A stretch of DNA of 63,525 bases, filler included, from Octopus bimaculoides (Eukaryota), in assembly GCF_001194135.2 (NCBI RefSeq). It is 5 parts of 4 records of this genome, joined end to end, with 100 filler letters (N's around TTAATTAATTAA, not from the genome) between each part and the next. Parts side by side here need not be neighbours in the genome. Positions count along the whole stretch, not along the records: positions 50,618 to 58,563 come from NC_068992.1; 4 more parts are not named here. One strand, 5' to 3'. Under the pieces are notes generated by a model. It was not told the DNA's origin, searched no databases, and worked only from the letters and a program-made list of their open reading frames with translations. The position numbers and the translations under genes were made by a program. Positions 28,703-58,563 of this stretch are shown piece after piece; the stretch's first letter is position 1; each line of letters begins with the position of its first letter.

Positions 28703-28909
28703 TGAATCGTGGCAAGGTATGGAAGGTTTTCGGAGGACTGGAGAGATTATGTCTGGGTGGAGAATTATACGAGGTATAGTACTATACAGAATACCGAAAG
28801 GATCTTCACCTCTTACATCACACCTTTCTTCCTACTTCAACGCCGAGGTGGTATAATTTCCTGGGAGAGAAATAATTTTGCGGCTGAGGATAGCTTTACA
28901 TTGTAAATT
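28697..28909 (+). mobile_element. Penelope-like element terminal (pLTR) fragment
   Basis: Colinear with the reverse complement of 56190-56410; contains TTTGCGG-CTGAGGA-TAGCTTTA (start of the hammerhead) and is then cut by a gap. Confidence 0.75.
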
Positions 28910-50617: not shown

Positions 50618-53052
50618 GGCGATGGTGCTCAGGTCCATCCTAGGGAAAGAGGAGAGGATAAGGAAGGCCACCAGTTTCTACATCGACGACATTTTGGTTG
50701 ACGAGACTGTAGTGCCAGCCACCGAGGTAGTGAGACACCTGGAGAGGTTCGGGCTGATTGCGAAGCCGCCTGAGTCGATGGTGGGGGGAGCTGCGCTGGG
50801 GCTGAAGCTACAAAAAGACAGATCGGGTGAGCTGGTGTTCCGGAGAGGAAACGAGATCCCAGAGCTGAGTTCCAGCCTCAGCAGGAGAGAGTTGTTCTCA
50901 GTTTGTGGGAAGTTGATTGGACACTATCCGATCGCTGGTTGGCTGCGCACTGCATGTAGTTACACCAAGAGATGAGCAGATGGAGAGTTGGAGTGACAAG
51001 GTGGGAGATGATGCGGGAAATCCTAGAAAGAACAAGAGCGGAAGACCCGGTCAGAGGAAACTGGTATGTGCCCAAGACGGAGTGCGGGACGGTTTGGTGT
51101 GATGCCAGCAGTATAGCGATAGGGGTTGTGTTGGAGATCGAGGGTGCTGAGGTGGAGGATGCGGCCTGGCTACGGAAAGCGGACGACTTCAACCACATCA
51201 ATGTCACTGAACTAGATGCGGTGTTGAAGGGGGTGAACTTGGCCCTGAGATGGGGGCTGTGGTNNNNNNNNNNNNNNNNNNNNNNNNNNNNNNNNNNNNN
51301 NNNNNNNNNNNNNNNNNNNNNNNNNNNNNNNNNNNNNNNNNNNNNNNNNNNNNNNNNNNNNNNNNNNNNNNNNNNNNNNNNNNNNNNNNNNNNNNNNNNN
51401 NNNNNNNNNNNNNNNNNNNNNNNNNNNNNNNNNNNNNNNNNNNNNNNNNNNNNNNNNNNNNNNNNNNNNNNNNNNNNNNNNNNNNNNNNNNNNNNNNNNN
51501 NNNNNNNNNNNNNNNNNNNNNNNNNNNNNNNNNNNNNNNNNNNNNNNNNNNNNNNNNNNNNNNNNNNNNNNNNNNNNNNNNNNNNNNNNNNNNNNNNNNN
51601 NNNNNNNNNNNNNNNNNNNNNNNNNNNNNNNNNNNNNNNNNNNNNNNNNNNNNNNNNNNNNNNNNNNNNNNNNNNNNNNNNNNNNNNNNNNNNNNNNNNN
51701 NNNNNNNNNNNNNNNNNNNNNNNNNNNNNNNNNNNNNNNNNNNNNNNNNNNNNNNNNNNNNNNNNNNNNNNNNNNNNNNNNNNNNNNNNNNNNNNNNNNN
51801 NNNNNNNNNNNNNNNNNNNNNNNNNNNNNNNNNNNNNNNNNNNNNNNNNNNNNNNNNNNNNNNNNNNNNNNNNNNNNNNNNNNNNNNNNNNNNNNNNNNN
51901 NNNNNNNNNNNNNNNNNNNNNNNNNNNNNNNNNNNNNNNNNNNNNNNNNNNNNNNNNNNNNNNNTGCTATGCACCACTTGGGGGTGGACAGGACCCTGTA
52001 TCTGGCGAAAATGATTGATGCTGACGTCACTAGGAGAAACGTCAAGAAAGTGGTCGCGAAATGTGACAGATGCCAGTCCATTGACCCCGCCCCAGGTGGG
52101 CATGAGCAAGGGAACCTCTCAGTAGAGCGCAACTGGAGGAGACTAGCTGTGGATGTGATGCACTACCGTCAGGGAATGTATCTCAGCATGGTCGACTGTG
52201 GGACAGGCCTGCTGGCCATTTGGAGAGAGCTGAGGACAGGCATTGCCGATGAGATTGCCCGCATTCTGAACGGGATATTCTTGGAGAGGGGTCCCGTGGA
52301 AGAACTGCTAATGGACAACGGGGTGGCGTTTCGTTCGGAAGTGTTGGGAGAGATGCTTGACTGGTGGAATGTGCGACGATTATTCAGAGCGGTGTATAGG
52401 CCGAGCGGCAACGGAATCGTTGAGAGGCACCATCGCACGAAAGGGGGCACATTTCGCCCCTGGAAGCCGTCTACTGGTACAACATGTCTCCCCGATCTGG
52501 ACAAGCGGAAGAGTCTGTGCCGCACAGAGCAGTGTTCAAATATGAATGGAGGCATCCCAGTAAGACGCCGGATNNNNNNNNNNNNNNNNNNNNNNNNNNN
52601 NNNNNNNNNNNNNNNNNNNNNNNNNNNNNNNNNNNNNNNNNNNNNNNNNNNNNNNNNNNNNNNNNNNNNNNNNNNNNNNNNNNNNNNNNNNNNNNNNNNN
52701 NNNNNNNNNNNNNNNNNNNNNNNNNNNNNNNNNNNNNNNNNNNNNNNNNNNNNNNNNNNNNNNNNNNNNNNNNNNNNNNNNNNNNNNNNNNNNCAGGGTG
52801 GCGTGTGGTATGACGTCAGTGACTGGGGAGGCTGACCGGAAGAGGAAAAAGAGCAGAGGGAGCCTCGATTGGGATTCATGCCTTTTTTCGAACGGGGTCG
52901 TGGTCAGGAGAGGACGCGCCAAGCAACGGTCTAGGTTTGGGAGAAGCAGCTGCTATTCCTAGTGTTCTTTGGGTCGGGGTAAGCTTCAAGGATTGGATAC
53001 CGCAAGACAGACTCGCAGTCGACGACAGGAAAACTGAGGTAAGGCGATTACA
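50618..53052 (+). mobile_element. Ty3/Gypsy-like LTR retrotransposon, decayed pol (RT-RNase H-integrase) and probable 3' LTR
   Basis: RT FYIDDILV (50622-50975), RNase H WCDASS..HINVTELDAV (to 51263), integrase H..CDRC with VD..MDNG-35-E (51969-52440). Frameshifts near 50975 and 52440. The GC-rich segment 52794-53052 ends in TTACA (putative LTR end). Confidence 0.88.
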
Positions 53053-54076
53053 TCTACTCGCACGCATACACCACAGACTATGCCAAGGTGATTCTTTTAA
53101 GGTTTACACTTAATTATATTGATGACTTCTTTGGCACTTATTTTATTGCTCACTGTCAAATGGCTACAATTTTAGAATATAGGCGTAAAGAGACATAAAC
53201 TTGACAGTTAATATCCTGTATCTATCACTTACTGGAAAATTACATTACCAATTCTACTGTCTGAAATTGCATTTACATTAATATCTTGATATTTGATTCA
53301 TAATTCTATTCTTGAGGCTATTTCTTGTTGCAAACATTGAATCAAAGTAGCACACCTTGCTTTAATGGACAATAGTATAATAACCTAGCCTGCTAGCACT
53401 AAGTGACTGATGAATTATCTTGTGGAAATTGAGTAATACAGTTAAAATAATAGAAACAAGTTTGTTCATTCATTTAACATGTTTTTTTTTTATATTCTAG
53501 CATGAGTTAGATAAGGAAATATTTGAGGCAAGAATTTATAGTTGAATGCTCATCCAGTTCCCAGGTTAAGGGACATTTATTTTCCTAAGGTTTTTTGAAA
53601 GTGCAGAGTGAATAGTTACAATGTGAACATCAGTACTGCTTGCTCACATGATGACAAGTGAAATGCTTATGCACACATACACATTGCGATGGTCTTACTA
53701 CAGTTTCCACCAATGAAATTCACTCAAAAGGCATCGGTTGGCCAAGGGAAAAAGCAGAAGCTGCTTGTTCAAGGTGTTGTATAGAAGAATGGAACCCCAA
53801 ACCATGTACTTATCAGATAAATTTCTTAAATACACTGCAATTCCTGCACCAAATATCAAGTTCACACACTAAGAATGAAACCCAGGCTGCTTGATAAAAT
53901 GGTGTGGATCCTGTTAAAGCATCTAATTTGAGGGAAAGGGAATGGCAGTCCCCTGCAGTGTAATCAGAAGAGTGGTCACCCAGCAAATGACAGATATGGA
54001 GTTCAAATGCCATGAGGGAGACTGTTGTTGACTTCTGTCTCAAATCAGAATTTAAAAATGTCAAATATTAAAACAG

Positions 54077-54297
54077 TTAACTCTTTAGTATTTAAACCAG
54101 TCATATCTGGCCCAAATATTCTTCCGGTTTTATGTTCAAACTGGCCATATCAGGCCTCTCACACCTGCCCTACAATGTCATTCTAAAAATAAACAGTTAC
54201 TTCACTGAAATCTGCATGATAATGCATGATTAATTCAAAACAATGTGAATAAATAAGTGTTACATTTGACAGAGTAATCTGAATGTTAAAAGGTTAA
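54077..54297. mobile_element. piggyBac-type MITE
   Basis: TTAA at both ends (54077-54080 and 54294-54297) with degenerate TIRs CTCTTTAGTATT / AATGTTAAAAGG. Confidence 0.6.
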
Positions 54298-54306
54298 ATC
54301 TGTTAC

Positions 54307-54395
54307 CTTAAAATAATGAAACATATCAGCTTCTTTCTCAGCACCAATCACATGAACCACTAATTGTTTGGGAAGTTCTATGCCAAAATTTGGAT
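54307..54395 (-). CDS. ZMYND15: ZMYND15-like gene, internal exon (phase 1 to 0)
   Basis: ttccaaactgtag|ATCCA...TTTAAG|gtaaca. Splices in frame to the upstream exon giving H-YPNFGIELPKQLVVHVIGAEKEADMFHYFK, similar to my recollection of ZMYND15 KQSLKIHVVEAGKEFD. Confidence 0.78.
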
Positions 54396-54499
54396 CTACA
54401 GTTTGGAAAGAAAGGGAATATTTACTCCTGAACAACAACGTTATGCTATCATCAACAGTAATAACAACACAAGAACTATAATATGAAAACATCATAAAT

Positions 54500-54658
54500 A
54501 TCCTTTCTATTATAGGCATAAGACCTGAAATTTACGGGGAGAGGGTAAGTTGATTACATTGACCCCAGTGTGTAACTGGTACTTATTTAATCAAATCCGA
54601 AAGGATGAAAGGCAAAGTTGACCTCAGCAGAATTTGAACTTGGAATGTAGTGGCAGAC
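54500..54658 (-). mobile_element. SINE family B, CpG-decayed
   Basis: GTTGACCTCAGCAGAATTTGAACT versus GTCGACCTCGGCAGAATTTGAGCT in the copy at 3338-3557. Confidence 0.8.
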
Positions 54659-54919
54659 ATCATAAATATGACATAACAAAGACAGGACATTGGTATTGAC
54701 AGTAATAGCAACACAACAAAGATATGAGATTAACTAAGACTTGGTAATATAAATATGACACAAGAAATATAGGGCATCTTCATTTACAATAACACCCCAA
54801 TAAATGTTGATGGATGAGGGGACATTAGAAAGACAAACTATTAAAACAGGAAGAGGTTTTATTTAGAAGCCAGTCTGGGAATAGAGGCAAGAAAACCCAA
54901 CAAGGCCTAACAACAACAT

Positions 54920-55195
54920 CATCATTGTTTAACGTCCGTTTTCCATGCTGGCATGGATTGGACAGTTCAACTGGGGTCTGATAAGCCAGGAGGCTGCACC
55001 AGGCTCCAATCTGATCTGGCAATATTTCTACAGCTGAATGTCCTTCCTAATGCCAACCACTGAGCGTGTAGTGGGTGCTTTTTGCGTGACACCAGCACAG
55101 GGGCCAGAGGATGCTTTTACATTCCACTGATGGTGCTCTAACGTGCCATTGGCACGGGAGCCAGTAAAGGCAGCGCTGGCATCAGCCACGTTTGG
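54920..55195 (-). mobile_element. RTE-type retroposon 3' end with (GAT)n tail
   Basis: Homologous to 26283-26390 and extends through TGTCCTTCCTAATGCCAACC, a typical RTE/SINE 3' motif in reverse. Confidence 0.65.
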
Positions 55196-55445
55196 GGTCA
55201 GCTACTTTGAGAGAAGTGGATGGTGAGTTGTTTAGATTCTGAGTTCAAATTCTGCCACAGGCAACTTTATCTTTTATTCTTCAGGGGCTGACAAAGTACA
55301 AAATGAAGTACATATAAAGTACTAATCAACTTACTTCCTTTACTGGAAAATTGCTGGCCTTATAGCAAAATCAGAAATCATTATGTAAACAAACAAAATC
55401 ACACACACAATAAAACTGAAACCATAAAAAATCTCTGTTCCTTAC

Positions 55446-55676
55446 AATGTAGTTGAAGACATGAAGTTATGATGTAAAAAAGGGTCAAAGGGTAGGTGAG
55501 GAGGATAGCAATGGGACTGTCGAGGCTAAATGAACGCCATTTGTAGTAGGAAAACCAGTTGGCAATGTCTCCTATCTCTGTTTGGTGTGCATGTTGTAGC
55601 TGTTTCAATCCTGATAGACATCCTAGTTCTCGTTCTTCGACCAAAACAAATGGAAAATCAACTTCTGTAAGTTCAC
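55446..55676 (-). CDS. ZMYND15: ZMYND15-like gene, internal exon (231 bp, phase 1 to 1)
   Basis: ttaattacag|GTGAAC...CTACATT|gtaagg. Open frame ELTEVDFPFVLVEERELGCLSGLKQLQHAHQTEIGDIANWFSYYKWRSFSLDSPIAILLTYPLTLFYIITSCLQLH; W..YY.WR..SLDSPIA.LLTYPLT..Y.IT matches ZMYND15/MSS51-family sequence as I recall it. Confidence 0.82.
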
Positions 55677-55749
55677 CTGTAATTAATAATAATACAAATT
55701 AAATTCACCTATAATTAATAATAATGTAGTTAATAAATACATAGGAGTA

Positions 55750-55938
55750 AGGCGACGAGCTGGCAGAAACATTAGCACGTCATCTGTCTTTGTTCTGAGT
55801 TCAAATTCCACCGAGGTCGACCTTGCCTTTCAACCTTTCAGGGCTGATAAATTAAGTACCAGTTGCATACTGGAGTTGATCTAATCAACTAGACTCTCCT
55901 CCAAAAATTCGGGCCTTGTGCCTAGAGTAGAAAAGAAT
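55750..55938 (+). mobile_element. SINE family B, CpG-decayed
   Basis: GGCGACGAGCTGGCAGAAACATTAG head with core; multiple CG to CA/TG changes. Confidence 0.85.
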
Positions 55939-55944
55939 ATATAC

Positions 55945-56100
55945 ATAGTGGTAAGAATCTTGCTTTCCAACCACGATTCCAACTTCAGTCCCACTGTATG
56001 GCACCTTGAGCAAGTATTTTCTACCGTACCCTCAGGCCAATCAAAGCCTTGTAAATGGATTTGATAGATGAAAACTGAAAGAAGCTCATCGTATATATAT
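55945..56100 (+). mobile_element. SINE family A head, CpG-decayed
   Basis: CAGTCCCACTGTATGGCACCTTGAGCAAGT..GAAAACTGAAAGAAGCTCATCGT. Confidence 0.8.
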
Positions 56101-56145
56101 ATATATAAATTGTAAATGTAAAAATAAAAACAAAACACAAAGGAT

Positions 56146-56225
56146 TCTGCGGTACATGTGTTTCAAGCTTTATAGTTGTTACATCAGTGTATAATTGACA
56201 GTATAAAGCTATCTTCAGCCGCAAA
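56146..56225 (-). ncRNA. Type I hammerhead ribozyme fold
   Basis: UUUGCGG CUGAAGA U AGCUUUAUA-[27 nt]-UAUAAAGCU U GAAACACAUGUA^CCGCAGA: 7-bp helix I, 9-bp helix II, 3-bp helix III, intact core and GUA triplet. Confidence 0.75.
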
Positions 56226-57787
56226 TGTATTCTCTCCCAAGAATTATATCACATAGAAGTTAAAGGAGGAAGAAAGATGAGATATAAGAGGTGAGGTTCC
56301 GTTTGGTATTTTGCATTGTAATATACCTCGTAGAATTCTTAATTTGATATATTTATACATAATTTCCTCGGTACTCCGGAATCCGTCAATACCTTGCCAC
56401 AATTGAGTGTGTAGTGAACGCTAAGTAAACAATACTATTTTATATTAGTTAGAAGGGTAGTGTTAAAGGAGGGAATAAGTTGGTGGTTAAAACAATATAA
56501 CAAAAATGAAATAATAATATAAAATAAAATAAGGAATATAAAATACTAAGAAAAAAATACACAGATTTTCATACAAAAATAAAAATAAAAGGAGTCAAAT
56601 CGGTGGGGCGGGTAATCTAAGAAATAATAAGAGAAAATCTGGATAGTAAAGTAAGATACATCTAAGCTATTTAGACGGGTTGGAGAAGGGTGGTGAGGAA
56701 AAATCTAAATGTAGAAGATAAAAAGATAAATAGATATAGATACAGAGATCTTAAAGGTCGTAAGGGATAGATATATATGAGCTGACACAGCTCATATATA
56801 TCTATCCCTTATATCAGTGGTGGGTCGTAAATAAGTAGCGTCAGGCTAGAGTAAACTTGAAATATGATATTCTTGTGGTGAGTGGTCAGTCTAGGCGAAT
56901 TACAACTTAAGTATACGAACTTATCTATTATATTGGTGCATACGCTTATCTAGATGATGAATGGGTGATGGAAGTGGAAAGGGTAATTAGAACATATAAG
57001 ACCTTAAAGAATGAATAATTAGAAAATGTCAACAAGAAAAGGGAAATAAAGTATATGGGAGAGGGAGGGTTGGACGTTAAAATTCAAAATACAGAGTATT
57101 GGGGGCATTTCAACCGTAGTAATATAGTATAATAGTGATAGGAAATAATAGCACCCACAATAATAATGCAAAAAATCAGAAATAAAGAATAAGAGATAAC
57201 AAATAAAAAATAAGAGATAAGAAATAAAATAAAAAATAAAAAATAAAACAATAAAAAAATAAAGAAATTAAAGAATAAAAAAATAAAAAAATAAGAAAAG
57301 AATATAAAATAAAAATGTAAAGGTATAAAGTGAAAATATAAAATATATAAAATTTGAGAATATATATATATATATTTATATAAATAAAAGAATATATATA
57401 TATATAAAAATAAAATAAAAAATAAAAATATAAAGATAATGGAATAAAGAAATTAAAAGTAAAAACTATAAAAAAAACATTGATTAGTGTTATTTCGTGT
57501 TATTATTGTGTATTGTAGTGTCATTGGAGAGTTTCGAGTCAGTGACTGAAAGGTAGAACTATATCCATAGGTTTGGGATTATGGATCCGCTTTATTAAAA
57601 ATGTGTGTATATTATGTGGTCATAATCTAGCTATTCGAGGGTAAACAAAATTATTAAGGTACATAGTTAGGTTAGAGGTAGAGTACGGGCTTTGTTAATT
57701 CGATGTCTGAGTTGTGTTAGGCAGGATCTAACGTGGGAGTAGTTAATGAGAGGAGGTGTAGAAGTGCATATAACTAAAAGAGAGGAC

Positions 57788-58563
57788 TTAGGGGTTATAA
57801 TATCTAAAGGTTGTCATCATTTTATGGATACAGGAGGGTTTGAAATCTGACTTCTTATTAACTAGCTTATTCTTATCGGGGAATTTAATAATTTTCAAAA
57901 GTTCAAGGGAGCATAACTGGCAACCAGTTCTATTATCTTTATATGTTGGGGCCGGTCCAACAATTGACCATCTAAGGTTAAAATCAATCTTGTCGTCCTT
58001 AAGCTCCCAAATTCTACGAGATAATGAGGTATTGTTAGCCTTATGTCTGAGTCTAAACGAAGATCCATGGTTATAAAACCTAGATTTCCAGGATGAAGAG
58101 CATCCAAGGTAAGTGAGGGTGTTAGTTTCCGTGATAATTTCGCAAGAGTATATTACGTTTTTAGCTAAGCAGTTTCCACATAAGGGACATGTCGAAGGTG
58201 TTACACAATTGCAACCGATTTTATACTTGTTAGGTCGTCTTATGCTTACATTTGTGGGGTAACTGCTTATAGTATTATTATCTATGCCAGTTCCTGAGTG
58301 GTTAGGGTTTACGCTTACATTGTTGTTATAATTATTGCTGCTACCTCTATTTGGGTTGTTCGAAGTTCCATCACCTCGATTCGTTCTGCCGTTAACATTG
58401 GTATTATACATATTATTTCTATTAGTAATATTATTAGAATCGTGGCTGGTATAATTATTAGGATTATTATTAAAGGTTGAGTTGGGTATTCTATTATTAG
58501 TGGTAGTGTCATTATTTAATGCGGAAGGATTATAAGGTGTGCTGCTATTTTGTGTTGGGTCTA
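57788..58563 (-). CDS. Penelope-like polyprotein C-terminus: Asn-rich linker, Cys motif and GIY-YIG endonuclease
   Basis: CNC-x5-CPLCGNCL, VIY-x11-YLG, RFYNH, CQLC, LVNKKS. The frame stays open upstream of the annotated Met (58411) all the way to the gap at 58563. Confidence 0.88.

What the first reader, a model, noticed from the sequence alone, without database searches (positions are those of the whole stretch)
56146..56225. Near-intact hammerhead ribozyme on the sense strand of a host-gene intron
Seen: complete core (CUGAAGA, GAAA, GUA), 7-bp helix I, perfect 9-bp helix II and a short helix III containing the palindrome ACAUGU. It is on the same strand as the ZMYND15-like exons, with predicted cleavage between 56153 and 56152, 476 nt upstream of the acceptor and with no gap in between. 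A second copy at 28877-28909 shares helix I and the core with N7 varied (A or G). Established: Penelope-like elements carry hammerheads in their pLTRs, often acting as dimers. Inference: the pre-mRNA could be cut co-transcriptionally, affecting splicing or yielding truncated or circular RNAs, so this may be an exaptation candidate. Caveats: U-U replaces the usual G10.1-C11.1 pair, helix III may require a dimer, and upstream host exons are not visible.
Basis: partly seen in the sequence, partly recalled or inferred. Interest (0 to 1): 0.8.

Follow-up and report, generated by a model that had tools for sequence, protein, structure and literature searches.

The report
Hammerhead ribozyme from a Penelope-like retrotransposon
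The motif is a real, complete hammerhead ribozyme, but it is the ordinary 3'-end module of a Penelope-like retrotransposon (Hydra clade) that landed in a TA microsatellite inside, or just upstream of, an MSS51/ZMYND-like gene, and nothing shows the host uses it.

Summary
On the minus strand, 56225..56146, there is a complete type-I hammerhead. It has a 7-bp helix I, the core CUGAAGA, a 9-bp helix II closed by U·U, GAAA, a short quasi-palindromic helix III, and the cleavage site GUA|C at 56153|56152. Chance is excluded: no comparable motif occurred in 200 Mb of composition-matched random sequence.

It is transposon-borne. On the same strand, 1.56 kb upstream, an open frame encodes the C-terminal GIY-YIG endonuclease of a Hydra-clade Penelope-like element (PLE), with the CxCX5C linker. 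I fetched 20 loci of relatives, representing about nine element families. Nearly all carry hammerheads just after the ORF, and these show strong covariation.

The window's oddities recur in those relatives. U·U at 10.1/11.1 occurs in three families. A 9-bp helix II occurs in the clam Solemya velum. All have a quasi-palindromic helix III. A 39-50-nt tail followed by (TA)n occurs in five; the window has 45 nt, then (TA)8.

Rfam hammerhead models miss both the window motif and the six relatives' loci scanned, so that negative result says nothing.

The motif is on the same strand as the MSS51-like exons, and an intronic position is likely but unproven. Exaptation or pre-mRNA cleavage is unsupported: this is a solo copy with a weak helix III, and published PLE hammerheads cleave poorly alone. 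This is a new member of a known kind and of low interest.

The parts
56146..56225 (-). Type-I hammerhead ribozyme motif. Helix I is 56225-56219 paired with 56152-56146. The core CUGAAGA is 56218-56212. U10.1 is 56211. Helix II is 56210-56202 paired with 56174-56166, with a 27-nt loop at 56201-56175. U11.1 is 56165. GAAA is 56164-56161. Helix III/loop CACAUGU is 56160-56154. A17 is 56153, and the cleavage site is 56153|56152.
   Evidence: Direct reading; fold; descriptor scan; null simulation.
56108..56145 (-). 3' 'tail' of the element. Together with the helix I 3' strand, it makes 45 nt between the cleavage site and the (TA)n target.
   Evidence: Relatives show the same layout: 39-50 nt after the cleavage site, then (TA)n, in L003, L016, L018, L015 and L115. 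An nhmmer profile of the relatives has its best hit in the piece at 56170..56091, E=0.0018. Craig et al. 2021 describe a 30-40-bp PLE tail and (TA)n targets.
56092..56107 (.). (TA)8 microsatellite, the presumed insertion target at the 3' end of the element.
   Evidence: TRF. Hydra-clade PLEs insert into (TA)n (PMC8557442), and the same is seen in relatives.
56243..56250 (-). TATA-like box GATATAAT, starting 32 nt upstream of C3. This is a possible pLTR promoter element and is only a tentative assignment.
   Evidence: Relatives have GTATATAAG/GTATATATA 37-43 nt upstream of C3. The alignment of the window's upstream flank is not statistically significant.
57788..58561 (-). Open frame cut by the piece edge. 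It encodes an N-rich linker and the C-terminal GIY-YIG endonuclease of a Hydra-clade Penelope-like element. Motifs: CNCVTPSTC (CxCX5C), VIY...YLG, CQLC..E..N..CIH. The stop codon is at 57790-57788.
   Evidence: Translation. 4195 representative relatives. Full-length relatives of about 700-720 aa carry RWK, DKS/DKT, YRDDGL, then IWFNPPF, then this domain. All 12 invariant residues are kept. Clade features are from PMC8557442.
55446..55676 (-). Host exon A of an MSS51/ZMYND-like gene. It is an internal exon, with acceptor acag|G at 55677|55676 and donor T|gtaag at 55446|55445.
   Evidence: The spliced A+B peptide matches Pfam MSS51_C positions 1-42 across the junction, E=1.7e-5, 25 bits.
54307..54395 (-). 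Host exon B (PNFGIELPKQLVVHVIGAEKEADMFHYFK), in frame with exon A.

Best explanation
The motif is the hammerhead ribozyme of the 3'-terminal (pseudo-LTR) module of a Hydra-clade Penelope-like retrotransposon. The element inserted, in the sense orientation, into a (TA)n microsatellite upstream of an internal exon of an MSS51/ZMYND-like gene.

In the element's own cycle, such hammerheads sit just downstream of the RT-endonuclease ORF. They recur in every unit of tandem or partial-tandem copies. They are thought to cut multimeric element transcripts, pairing two copies through the quasi-palindromic helix III, possibly helped by the element's protein.

At this locus the copy is solo. It is either the end of the same element as the endonuclease ORF 1.56 kb upstream, with a non-coding insertion or expansion in the 3' UTR, or a separate, heavily 5'-truncated 3' fragment. 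It is most likely a passenger of the insertion that cleaves host pre-mRNA weakly or not at all.

Shown: the motif, its non-random nature, the PLE endonuclease ORF on the same strand, the shared architecture with relatives' hammerheads, and the tail plus (TA)n. Inferred: physical continuity with the ORF copy, the intronic position, and low activity as a monomer.
For: 1. The complete core and helices are present, and chance is excluded.

2. The ORF at 58561..57788 on the same strand has the Hydra-clade endonuclease hallmarks: the CxCX5C linker, and CxxC and CxH around the conserved E and N. It belongs to a family of more than 4000 clusters. Full-length members carry a reverse transcriptase followed by this C-terminal domain.

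3. Of the 20 relatives' loci fetched, nearly all have a hammerhead on the ORF strand; six with an intact ORF place it 91-185 nt after the stop. 10 of the 13 modelled pairs show compensatory changes, and 0 of 500 shuffles reach the observed score.

4. The window's unusual traits recur in those relatives.
- U..U flanks helix II in L001, L002 and L004-13.
- Helix II is 9 bp in Solemya velum L115.
- The GAAAC...GU(A/C/U) helix III is quasi-palindromic in all.
- N7 is A in several.

5. A tail of 39-50 nt followed by (TA)n is seen in five relatives, against 45 nt then (TA)8 here.

6. A sequence profile of the relatives' TATA-hammerhead-tail region has its best hit in the piece exactly at 56170..56091, E=0.0018.

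7. Literature:
- PLE hammerheads have a long helix II and a palindromic helix III and act as dimers with low in vitro activity (PMC4209133).
- Hydra-clade elements universally carry hammerheads and target (TA)n (PMC8557442).
- An Anolis PLE hammerhead cleaves only with the element's protein (PMC11167929).
Against: - The hammerhead lies 1563 nt after the ORF stop, against 91-185 nt in relatives. The interval holds no PLE coding remnant and no significant internal duplication, so linkage to that ORF copy is not shown.
- A covariance model built from the relatives scores the window motif only 7 bits, E=2.3. The cause is the 37 extra nucleotides in helix II.
- No Rfam hammerhead model matches.
- No closer relative of this particular hammerhead was found, so there is no covariation evidence for its own long helix II.
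- The nhmmer hit is partly carried by the TA repeat (bias 15.3).
Confidence: 0.82

Rival explanations
1. Exapted intronic ribozyme. The sense-strand hammerhead cuts the MSS51-like pre-mRNA co-transcriptionally and so affects splicing or produces truncated or circular RNAs.
For: - It is on the same strand as the host exons, and exon A is an internal exon, so the site is probably transcribed.
- The core is intact.
- Domesticated intronic hammerheads exist in amniotes in RECK, CTCL and DTNB (PMC6155905).
- The U.U variant Amex2 still cleaves 22% per hour as a monomer (PMC7229834).
Against: - It is a solo copy with no partner for a dimeric helix III.
- Helix III has only 2-3 bp.
- No Rfam HH9/HH10 or other hammerhead model matches.
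- The adjacent endonuclease ORF is still open with all 12 invariant residues, so the insertion looks young rather than conserved.
- PLE min-hammerheads show no monomer cleavage or need PLE protein, and no RNA-seq ends map to the site in Anolis.
- A 2026 preprint abstract reports tandem hammerhead elements (non-LTR retrozymes) excluded from vertebrate introns.
- No cross-species or expression data could be obtained.
Confidence: 0.06
2. The hammerhead belongs to a separate short non-autonomous element: a retrozyme-like or solo pLTR fragment mobilised by PLEs. It would not be part of the copy that carries the endonuclease ORF.
For: - The gap to the ORF is 1563 nt and contains no PLE coding sequence.
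- A second (TA)n/(AT)n tract at 57360-57406 lies about 380 nt after the ORF stop, where that copy's own 3' end would be expected.
- PLEs are often heavily 5'-truncated, and most min-hammerheads occur as single dispersed motifs.
- Retrozymes are proposed to derive from PLE pLTRs.
Against: - There is no tandem repeat of 150-450 bp and no second hammerhead.
- The putative degenerate hammerhead/pLTR after the ORF (about 57541-57508) is not statistically supported.
- This is a sub-variant of the main explanation rather than a different kind of object.
Confidence: 0.3
3. Chance resemblance to a hammerhead in AT-rich intronic DNA.
For: No Rfam hit. The z-score of the fold is only -1.6. The relatives' covariance model is not significant.
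Against: The expected number for this piece is about 1e-6 to 4e-6. The empirical null from 95 chance core matches never approaches helix I of 7 bp plus helix II of 9 bp. Independent context also argues against chance: a PLE endonuclease ORF on the same strand, and the tail plus (TA)n.
Confidence: 0.01

Closest known systems
Hammerheads of Hydra-clade Penelope-like elements (Craig, Yushenova, Rodriguez & Arkhipova 2021, PMC8557442). Examples fetched here: L001-L019 and Solemya velum L115.
   Same: - Same strand as, and downstream of, an RT/GIY-YIG ORF.
- CUGANGA / GAAA / GU-H core.
- U..U flanking helix II in three families.
- 9-bp helix II in Solemya.
- Quasi-palindromic helix III starting GAAAC.
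- Tail of about 40-50 nt, then (TA)n.
   Different: - A 27-nt loop on helix II, against 4-5 nt in relatives.
- Helix I of 7 bp, against 4-6 bp.
- 1563 nt from the ORF stop, against 91-185 nt.
- Solo copy, not in a tandem or pLTR pair within the piece.
Minimal hammerheads of metazoan PLEs (Cervera & De la Pena 2014, PMC4209133).
   Same: Long helix II (7-8 bp there), a short or palindromic helix III implying dimers, and mostly dispersed single copies from truncated PLEs.
   Different: Their consensus has one bulged nucleotide 5' of helix II and a conserved G10.1-C11.1. Here there is a symmetric U.U.
Axolotl retrozyme hammerhead HHR_Amex2 (Cervera & De la Pena 2020, PMC7229834).
   Same: A U.U mismatch at the base of helix II, and a helix III of 2 bp with a tetraloop. 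It is weakly active as a monomer and better as a dimer.
   Different: Amex2 sits in 350-bp tandem repeats (non-LTR retrozymes) with loop1-loop2 contacts. No tandem array or recognisable tertiary contact is present here.
Conserved intronic hammerheads of amniotes (HH9/HH10 in RECK, CTCL, DTNB; De la Pena & Garcia-Robles 2010, cited in PMC6155905).
   Same: A type-I hammerhead in the sense orientation in a presumptive intron of a protein-coding gene, probably descended from a retroelement.
   Different: Those are conserved across classes of vertebrates and have tertiary contacts. This one is attached to a fresh-looking transposon copy, conservation is untested, and no Rfam HH9/HH10 match was found.

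Membership tests
Hammerhead ribozyme (type I) | Conserved core C3-U4-G5-A6-N7-G8-A9, G12-A13-A14, A15.1-U16.1, and H17 not G. | tested here: met
   CUGAAGA, GAAA, A15.1/U16.1 and A17 are all present.
Hammerhead ribozyme (type I) | Three helices around the core, with helix I open-ended. | tested here: met
   Helix I has 7 bp and helix II has 9 bp. Helix III has 2-3 bp, or 3+3 bp in a dimer.
Hammerhead ribozyme (type I) | G10.1-C11.1 pair at the base of helix II. | tested here: not met
   U.U is present here. The same U..U occurs in 6 of the 13 aligned relatives' hammerheads and in the published Amex2, so it is a known natural variant.
Hammerhead ribozyme (type I) | Match to an Rfam hammerhead covariance model. 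| tested here: inconclusive
   No hit at E<=10 in the piece or in a 131-nt sub-window. No hammerhead hit at E<=1 in the six relatives' loci scanned, all of which carry clear PLE hammerheads, so the test lacks power.
Hammerhead ribozyme (type I) | Self-cleavage at H17. | not testable with these tools
   Needs in vitro transcription or RNA end mapping.
PLE (Hydra-clade) 3' hammerhead module | Lies shortly downstream of the RT/GIY-YIG ORF on the same strand. | tested here: inconclusive
   It is on the same strand as the endonuclease ORF, but 1563 nt away, against 91-185 nt in relatives. No coding remnant lies in between.
PLE (Hydra-clade) 3' hammerhead module | Palindromic or quasi-palindromic helix III (dimer design). 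| tested here: met
   ACACAUGU contains the palindrome ACAUGU. Relatives have CUCAGAG, CUACUAG and CAAUUUUG.
PLE (Hydra-clade) 3' hammerhead module | Tail of 30-50 nt after the hammerhead, then the (TA)n target. | tested here: met
   45 nt, then (TA)8. Five relatives have 39-50 nt.
PLE (Hydra-clade) 3' hammerhead module | Significant match to a model built from relatives. | tested here: inconclusive
   Covariance model R1 gives 7.0 bits, E=2.3, a partial match. The nhmmer profile including flanks gives its best hit in the piece here, E=0.0018, with high compositional bias.
PLE (Hydra-clade) 3' hammerhead module | A second hammerhead copy nearby (pLTR or tandem). | tested here: not met
   The descriptor finds only one motif in 53100-58563.
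Hydra-clade PLE (for the ORF 58561..57788) | C-terminal GIY-YIG endonuclease with a CxCX5C linker, and CxxC and CxH around the conserved E and N. | tested here: met
   CNCVTPSTC; VIY..YLG; CQLC-SLE; N; CIH. Features are from PMC8557442.
Hydra-clade PLE (for the ORF 58561..57788) | Reverse transcriptase with an RWK motif and DKT in place of DKG. | not testable with these tools
   The reverse transcriptase part lies beyond the piece edge. Full-length homologues show RWK/RWR, DKS/DKT and YRDDGL.
Non-LTR retrozyme | Tandem repeats of 150-450 bp, each with a type-I hammerhead. | tested here: not met
   There is no such tandem array and only a single hammerhead.
Domesticated intronic hammerhead (HH9/HH10 type) | Conservation at the orthologous intron across species. 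| not testable with these tools
   The host exon query found no homologue in the protein index, so no orthologous locus could be fetched.

The most novel reading that the evidence does not exclude
The solo sense-strand PLE hammerhead is active in the MSS51-like pre-mRNA. This could be helped by PLE protein supplied in trans, or by its unusually long and stable helix II. It would then act as a young, lineage-specific regulator of that gene through transcript truncation or altered splicing. That would be a caught-in-the-act example of how the conserved intronic hammerheads of amniotes arose.
Probability: 0.05. Interest if true: 0.55.

Novelty: new member of a known kind. Interest (0 to 1): 0.17.

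Why it matters
As it stands this is routine transposon annotation. Penelope-like elements are known to carry hammerheads, and thousands of dispersed solo copies exist in invertebrate genomes.

Three modest points of value came out of the work:
- Rfam hammerhead models missed the Hydra-clade PLE hammerheads in all six relatives' loci scanned, so standard annotation will overlook them.
- The U.U at 10.1/11.1 and a 9-bp helix II are recurrent natural variants in this clade rather than signs of decay.
- The layout of hammerhead, then a tail of about 40-50 nt, then (TA)n is a handy diagnostic of Hydra-clade 3' ends.

The locus would become interesting only if the motif were shown to cut the host pre-mRNA.

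Tried and rejected
- Rfam cmscan on the piece and on a 131-nt sub-window found no hammerhead family. The same negative result on six relatives' loci shows the test is uninformative.
- My first simple pattern scan missed the motif because helix II exceeded the allowed gap.
- A covariance model built from 13 relatives' hammerheads was not significant on the window, 7 bits.
- An exact-pattern scan of viral contigs gave 0 hits. The scan of metagenome contigs gave 95 hits, all chance, useful only as an empirical null.
- An exact-product look-up of the window ORF found nothing on record.
- The host exon peptide in the word-indexed protein search found no homologue, so the organism and orthologous introns could not be retrieved.
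- I looked for a second, degenerate hammerhead/pLTR after the ORF stop (about 57541-57508: GUCA CUGAC UC GAAAC ...UGAC, with GGATATAG upstream). The alignments are not better than shuffles: 21 of 300 and 39 of 500 shuffles reach the observed score.
- A self-comparison of 56080-57800 found only T-rich low-complexity matches.
- tblastn with 60 full-length PLE proteins plus the window's own endonuclease frame against 55677-57787 found no coding remnant.
- The supplement of PMC8557442 with the published Hydra hammerheads is not held.

Full report
**1. The observation.** The hammerhead is on the minus strand. Reading 56225 to 56146 gives UUUGCGG / CUGAAGA / U / AGCUUUAUA / 27-nt loop / UAUAAAGCU / U / GAAA / CACAUGU / A | CCGCAGA.

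- All invariant core positions are present: C3-A9, G12-A14, A15.1-U16.1 and H17=A.
- Helix I has 7 bp, one of them G.U. Helix II has 9 perfect pairs closed by a U.U at 10.1/11.1.
- Helix III is 2 bp with an ACAU tetraloop. In a dimer it would be 3+3 bp around a 2x2 internal loop, and it contains the palindrome ACAUGU.
- The predicted cleavage site is 56153|56152, which is 476 nt upstream of the acceptor acag|G at 55677|55676. No N run lies in between.
- The MFE and centroid folds retain helices I and II.

**2. Is it more than chance?** A descriptor of my own requires the core, helix II with optional one-nucleotide offsets, GAAA, a short helix III ending in U-H, and helix I. It finds only this motif in 53100-58563 on both strands.

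In 200 Mb of first-order Markov sequence with the same composition, no hit had helix I >=7 and helix II >=9. Extrapolation gives about 0.02-0.05 hits per 200 Mb, or about 1e-6 to 4e-6 for this piece.

A metagenome scan for the core plus the first three helix II pairs returned 95 matches. All were chance, and none combined a long helix I with a long helix II. The motif is therefore real.

**3. What surrounds it.**

- On the same strand, an open frame runs from the piece edge (58561) to a stop at 57788. Its last 146 residues have 4195 representative relatives in an exhaustive search.
- Full-length relatives are about 700-720 aa. They carry an RWK motif, DKS/DKT, the reverse transcriptase motif YRDDGL, an IWFNPPF segment and then this domain at the C-terminus. 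Weak Pfam RVT_1 and GIY-YIG hits occur in two of them.
- The window frame has CNCVTPSTC (CxCX5C), VIY...YLG, CQLC, and the conserved E and N followed by CIH. These match the description of the Hydra clade of Penelope-like elements by Craig et al. 2021 (PMC8557442). That clade is also reported to carry hammerheads universally and to insert into (TA)n.
- The window endonuclease keeps all 12 invariant residues of the alignment, so the copy looks young.
- Named members among the hits come from Solemya velum and Apostichopus japonicus.

**4. Hammerheads of the relatives.** I fetched 20 loci, L001-L019 and L115, representing about nine element families.

- Nearly all carry a hammerhead on the ORF strand. 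Six loci with an intact ORF place it 91-185 nt after the stop. It is repeated once per unit in tandem arrays: period 2428 in L001 and 2513 in L014.
- On an alignment of 13 of them, 10 of 13 pairs show compensatory changes, and no shuffle of 500 reaches the observed covariation. A caveat is that these sequences were picked with a pairing descriptor.
- The window's two apparent defects are family traits. U..U flanking helix II occurs in L001, L002 and L004-13, for example CUGAAGA U CGCC UCCAA GGCG U GAAA. A 9-bp helix II occurs in the clam Solemya velum: CUGAAGA GAGAGGCUG CACU UAGCCUUUC GAAA CAAUUUUGU A.
- Helix III is quasi-palindromic throughout: CUCAGAG, CUACUAG, CAAUUUUG.
- The published axolotl HHR_Amex2 also has a U.U at the base of helix II. 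It cleaves 22% per hour as a monomer and much better as a dimer (PMC7229834).

**5. The 3' end.** In L003, L016, L018, L015 and Solemya L115, the cleavage site is followed by 39-50 nt and then a (TA)n tract. In the window it is followed by 45 nt and then (TA)8 at 56107-56092.

- This matches the 30-40-bp PLE 'tail' and the (TA)n target preference in the literature.
- An nhmmer profile built from the relatives' TATA-hammerhead-tail regions has its best hit in the piece at 56170..56091, E=0.0018. The hit is partly driven by the TA repeat.
- Relatives also share a GTATATAAG box 37-43 nt upstream of C3. The window has GATATAAT starting 32 nt upstream (56250-56243). That resemblance is not statistically supported.

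**6. What does not fit.**

- The hammerhead is 1563 nt from the ORF stop.
- The interval contains an A/T-rich minisatellite (57170-57480), an (AT)n tract (57360-57406) and a perfect 24-bp palindrome (56761-56811). It has no PLE coding remnant and no significant internal duplication.
- So either the 3' UTR of the ORF copy has been expanded or interrupted, or the hammerhead unit is a separate, heavily 5'-truncated or non-autonomous fragment. I cannot decide between these.
- A covariance model built from the relatives scores the window only 7 bits, E=2.3, because of the 37 extra nucleotides in helix II.
- Rfam finds no hammerhead here. It also finds none in the six relatives' loci scanned, so this negative result carries no weight.
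- No closer copy of this hammerhead was found in viral or metagenome contigs.

**7. The host gene.** On the minus strand, exon A (55676..55446) and exon B (54395..54307) have consensus splice sites and join in frame. The joined peptide matches Pfam MSS51_C positions 1-42 across the junction, with E=1.7e-5 and 25 bits against a gathering score of 27.

Exon A has no start codon and has a stop immediately upstream in frame, so it is an internal exon. No MYND-finger exon is visible between 55677 and 58563. The hammerhead is therefore probably intronic and sense-oriented, but the upstream exons are outside the piece. The exon peptide found no homologue in the indexed protein search.

**8. Mechanism.** The best-supported reading is that the motif is the processing ribozyme of a PLE transcript, designed to act when two copies pair through helix III in tandem or pLTR transcripts. 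Its role in the PLE cycle is still debated.

- Min-hammerheads are inactive as monomers and weak as dimers in vitro (PMC4209133).
- The Anolis PLE hammerhead cleaves only with the element's protein, is not needed for insertion in vitro, and leaves no RNA-seq ends (PMC11167929).
- A solo copy in a host intron is therefore most likely a passenger.

It has no support here: there is no partner copy, no tertiary-contact motifs, an apparently young insertion, and no conservation or expression data.

**9. Verdict.** The PLE origin is confirmed and refined to the Hydra clade. 'Near-intact' should read 'intact for its family'. Exaptation is unsupported. This is a new member of a known kind and of low interest.

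Noticed in passing
window 56761-56811: Perfect 24-bp inverted repeat with a 3-nt spacer (TAAGGGATAGATATATATGAGCTG / CAGCTCATATATATCTATCCCTTA). It gives sub-threshold miRNA-family hits in Rfam, for example mir-4536 at 39 bits against a gathering score of 76. It could be an inverted-copy junction of the kind PLEs create, or a hairpin RNA. A long (TA)n-centred palindrome also sits between inverted hammerheads in relative L003 (3534-3686).
   Followed up: partly
window 50622-52835 (+): Fragment of an LTR retrotransposon: a DUF7047 hit at E=1.7e-15 and a weak integrase core domain (rve) hit. Its GC content is 55%, against about 35% in the rest of the piece, and it is interrupted by two N gaps (51264-51964, 52574-52793).
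   Followed up: partly
window 55237-55330, 55793-55900 (+) and 54548-54700 (-): Three copies of a short interspersed repeat of about 100-150 nt, 70-80% alike, with a tRNA T-arm-like GAGTTCAAATTC core. ARAGORN calls no tRNA. From memory it resembles the abundant tRNA-derived SINE of octopuses, which would make the source a cephalopod; this was not tested.
   Followed up: partly
window 57541-57508 (-): Possible decayed hammerhead about 250 nt after the PLE ORF stop: GUCA CUGAC UC GAAAC UCUCCAA UGAC, as if helix II were deleted. GGATATAG lies upstream, and an (AT)n tract about 100 nt downstream (57406-57360). It would mark the true 3' end of the ORF-bearing copy, but the alignments are no better than shuffles.
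   Followed up: yes
L001-L004, L014, L018 (relatives): A conserved TATA-like box (GTATATAAG / GTATATATA) lies 37-43 nt upstream of C3 of the hammerhead in six Hydra-clade families. Transcripts from the pLTR would therefore start at or just before helix I, putting the ribozyme at the extreme 5' end of the element RNA. An AATAAA often lies next to the hammerhead.
   Followed up: partly
L001, L014, L009-L013: Hydra-clade PLEs occur as head-to-tail arrays (period 2428 nt in L001, 2513 nt in L014). They also occur as many unit-length contigs of about 2.4-2.5 kb in Logan and ENA assemblies. This is consistent with very abundant, recently active or highly transcribed elements.
   Followed up: no
L002 5800-5830: In one relative, the hammerhead after the ORF is truncated exactly within the motif. 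A (TA)n tract is joined directly to GAAACUCAGAGUU|ACAGA, which is a 5'-truncated unit beginning inside the ribozyme.
   Followed up: no
window 57170-57480: A/T-rich minisatellite of about 300 bp (periods 7-8, 19 and 32) plus an (AT)23 tract, lying between the PLE ORF and the hammerhead. It accounts for part of the unusual 1.56-kb spacing.
   Followed up: partly
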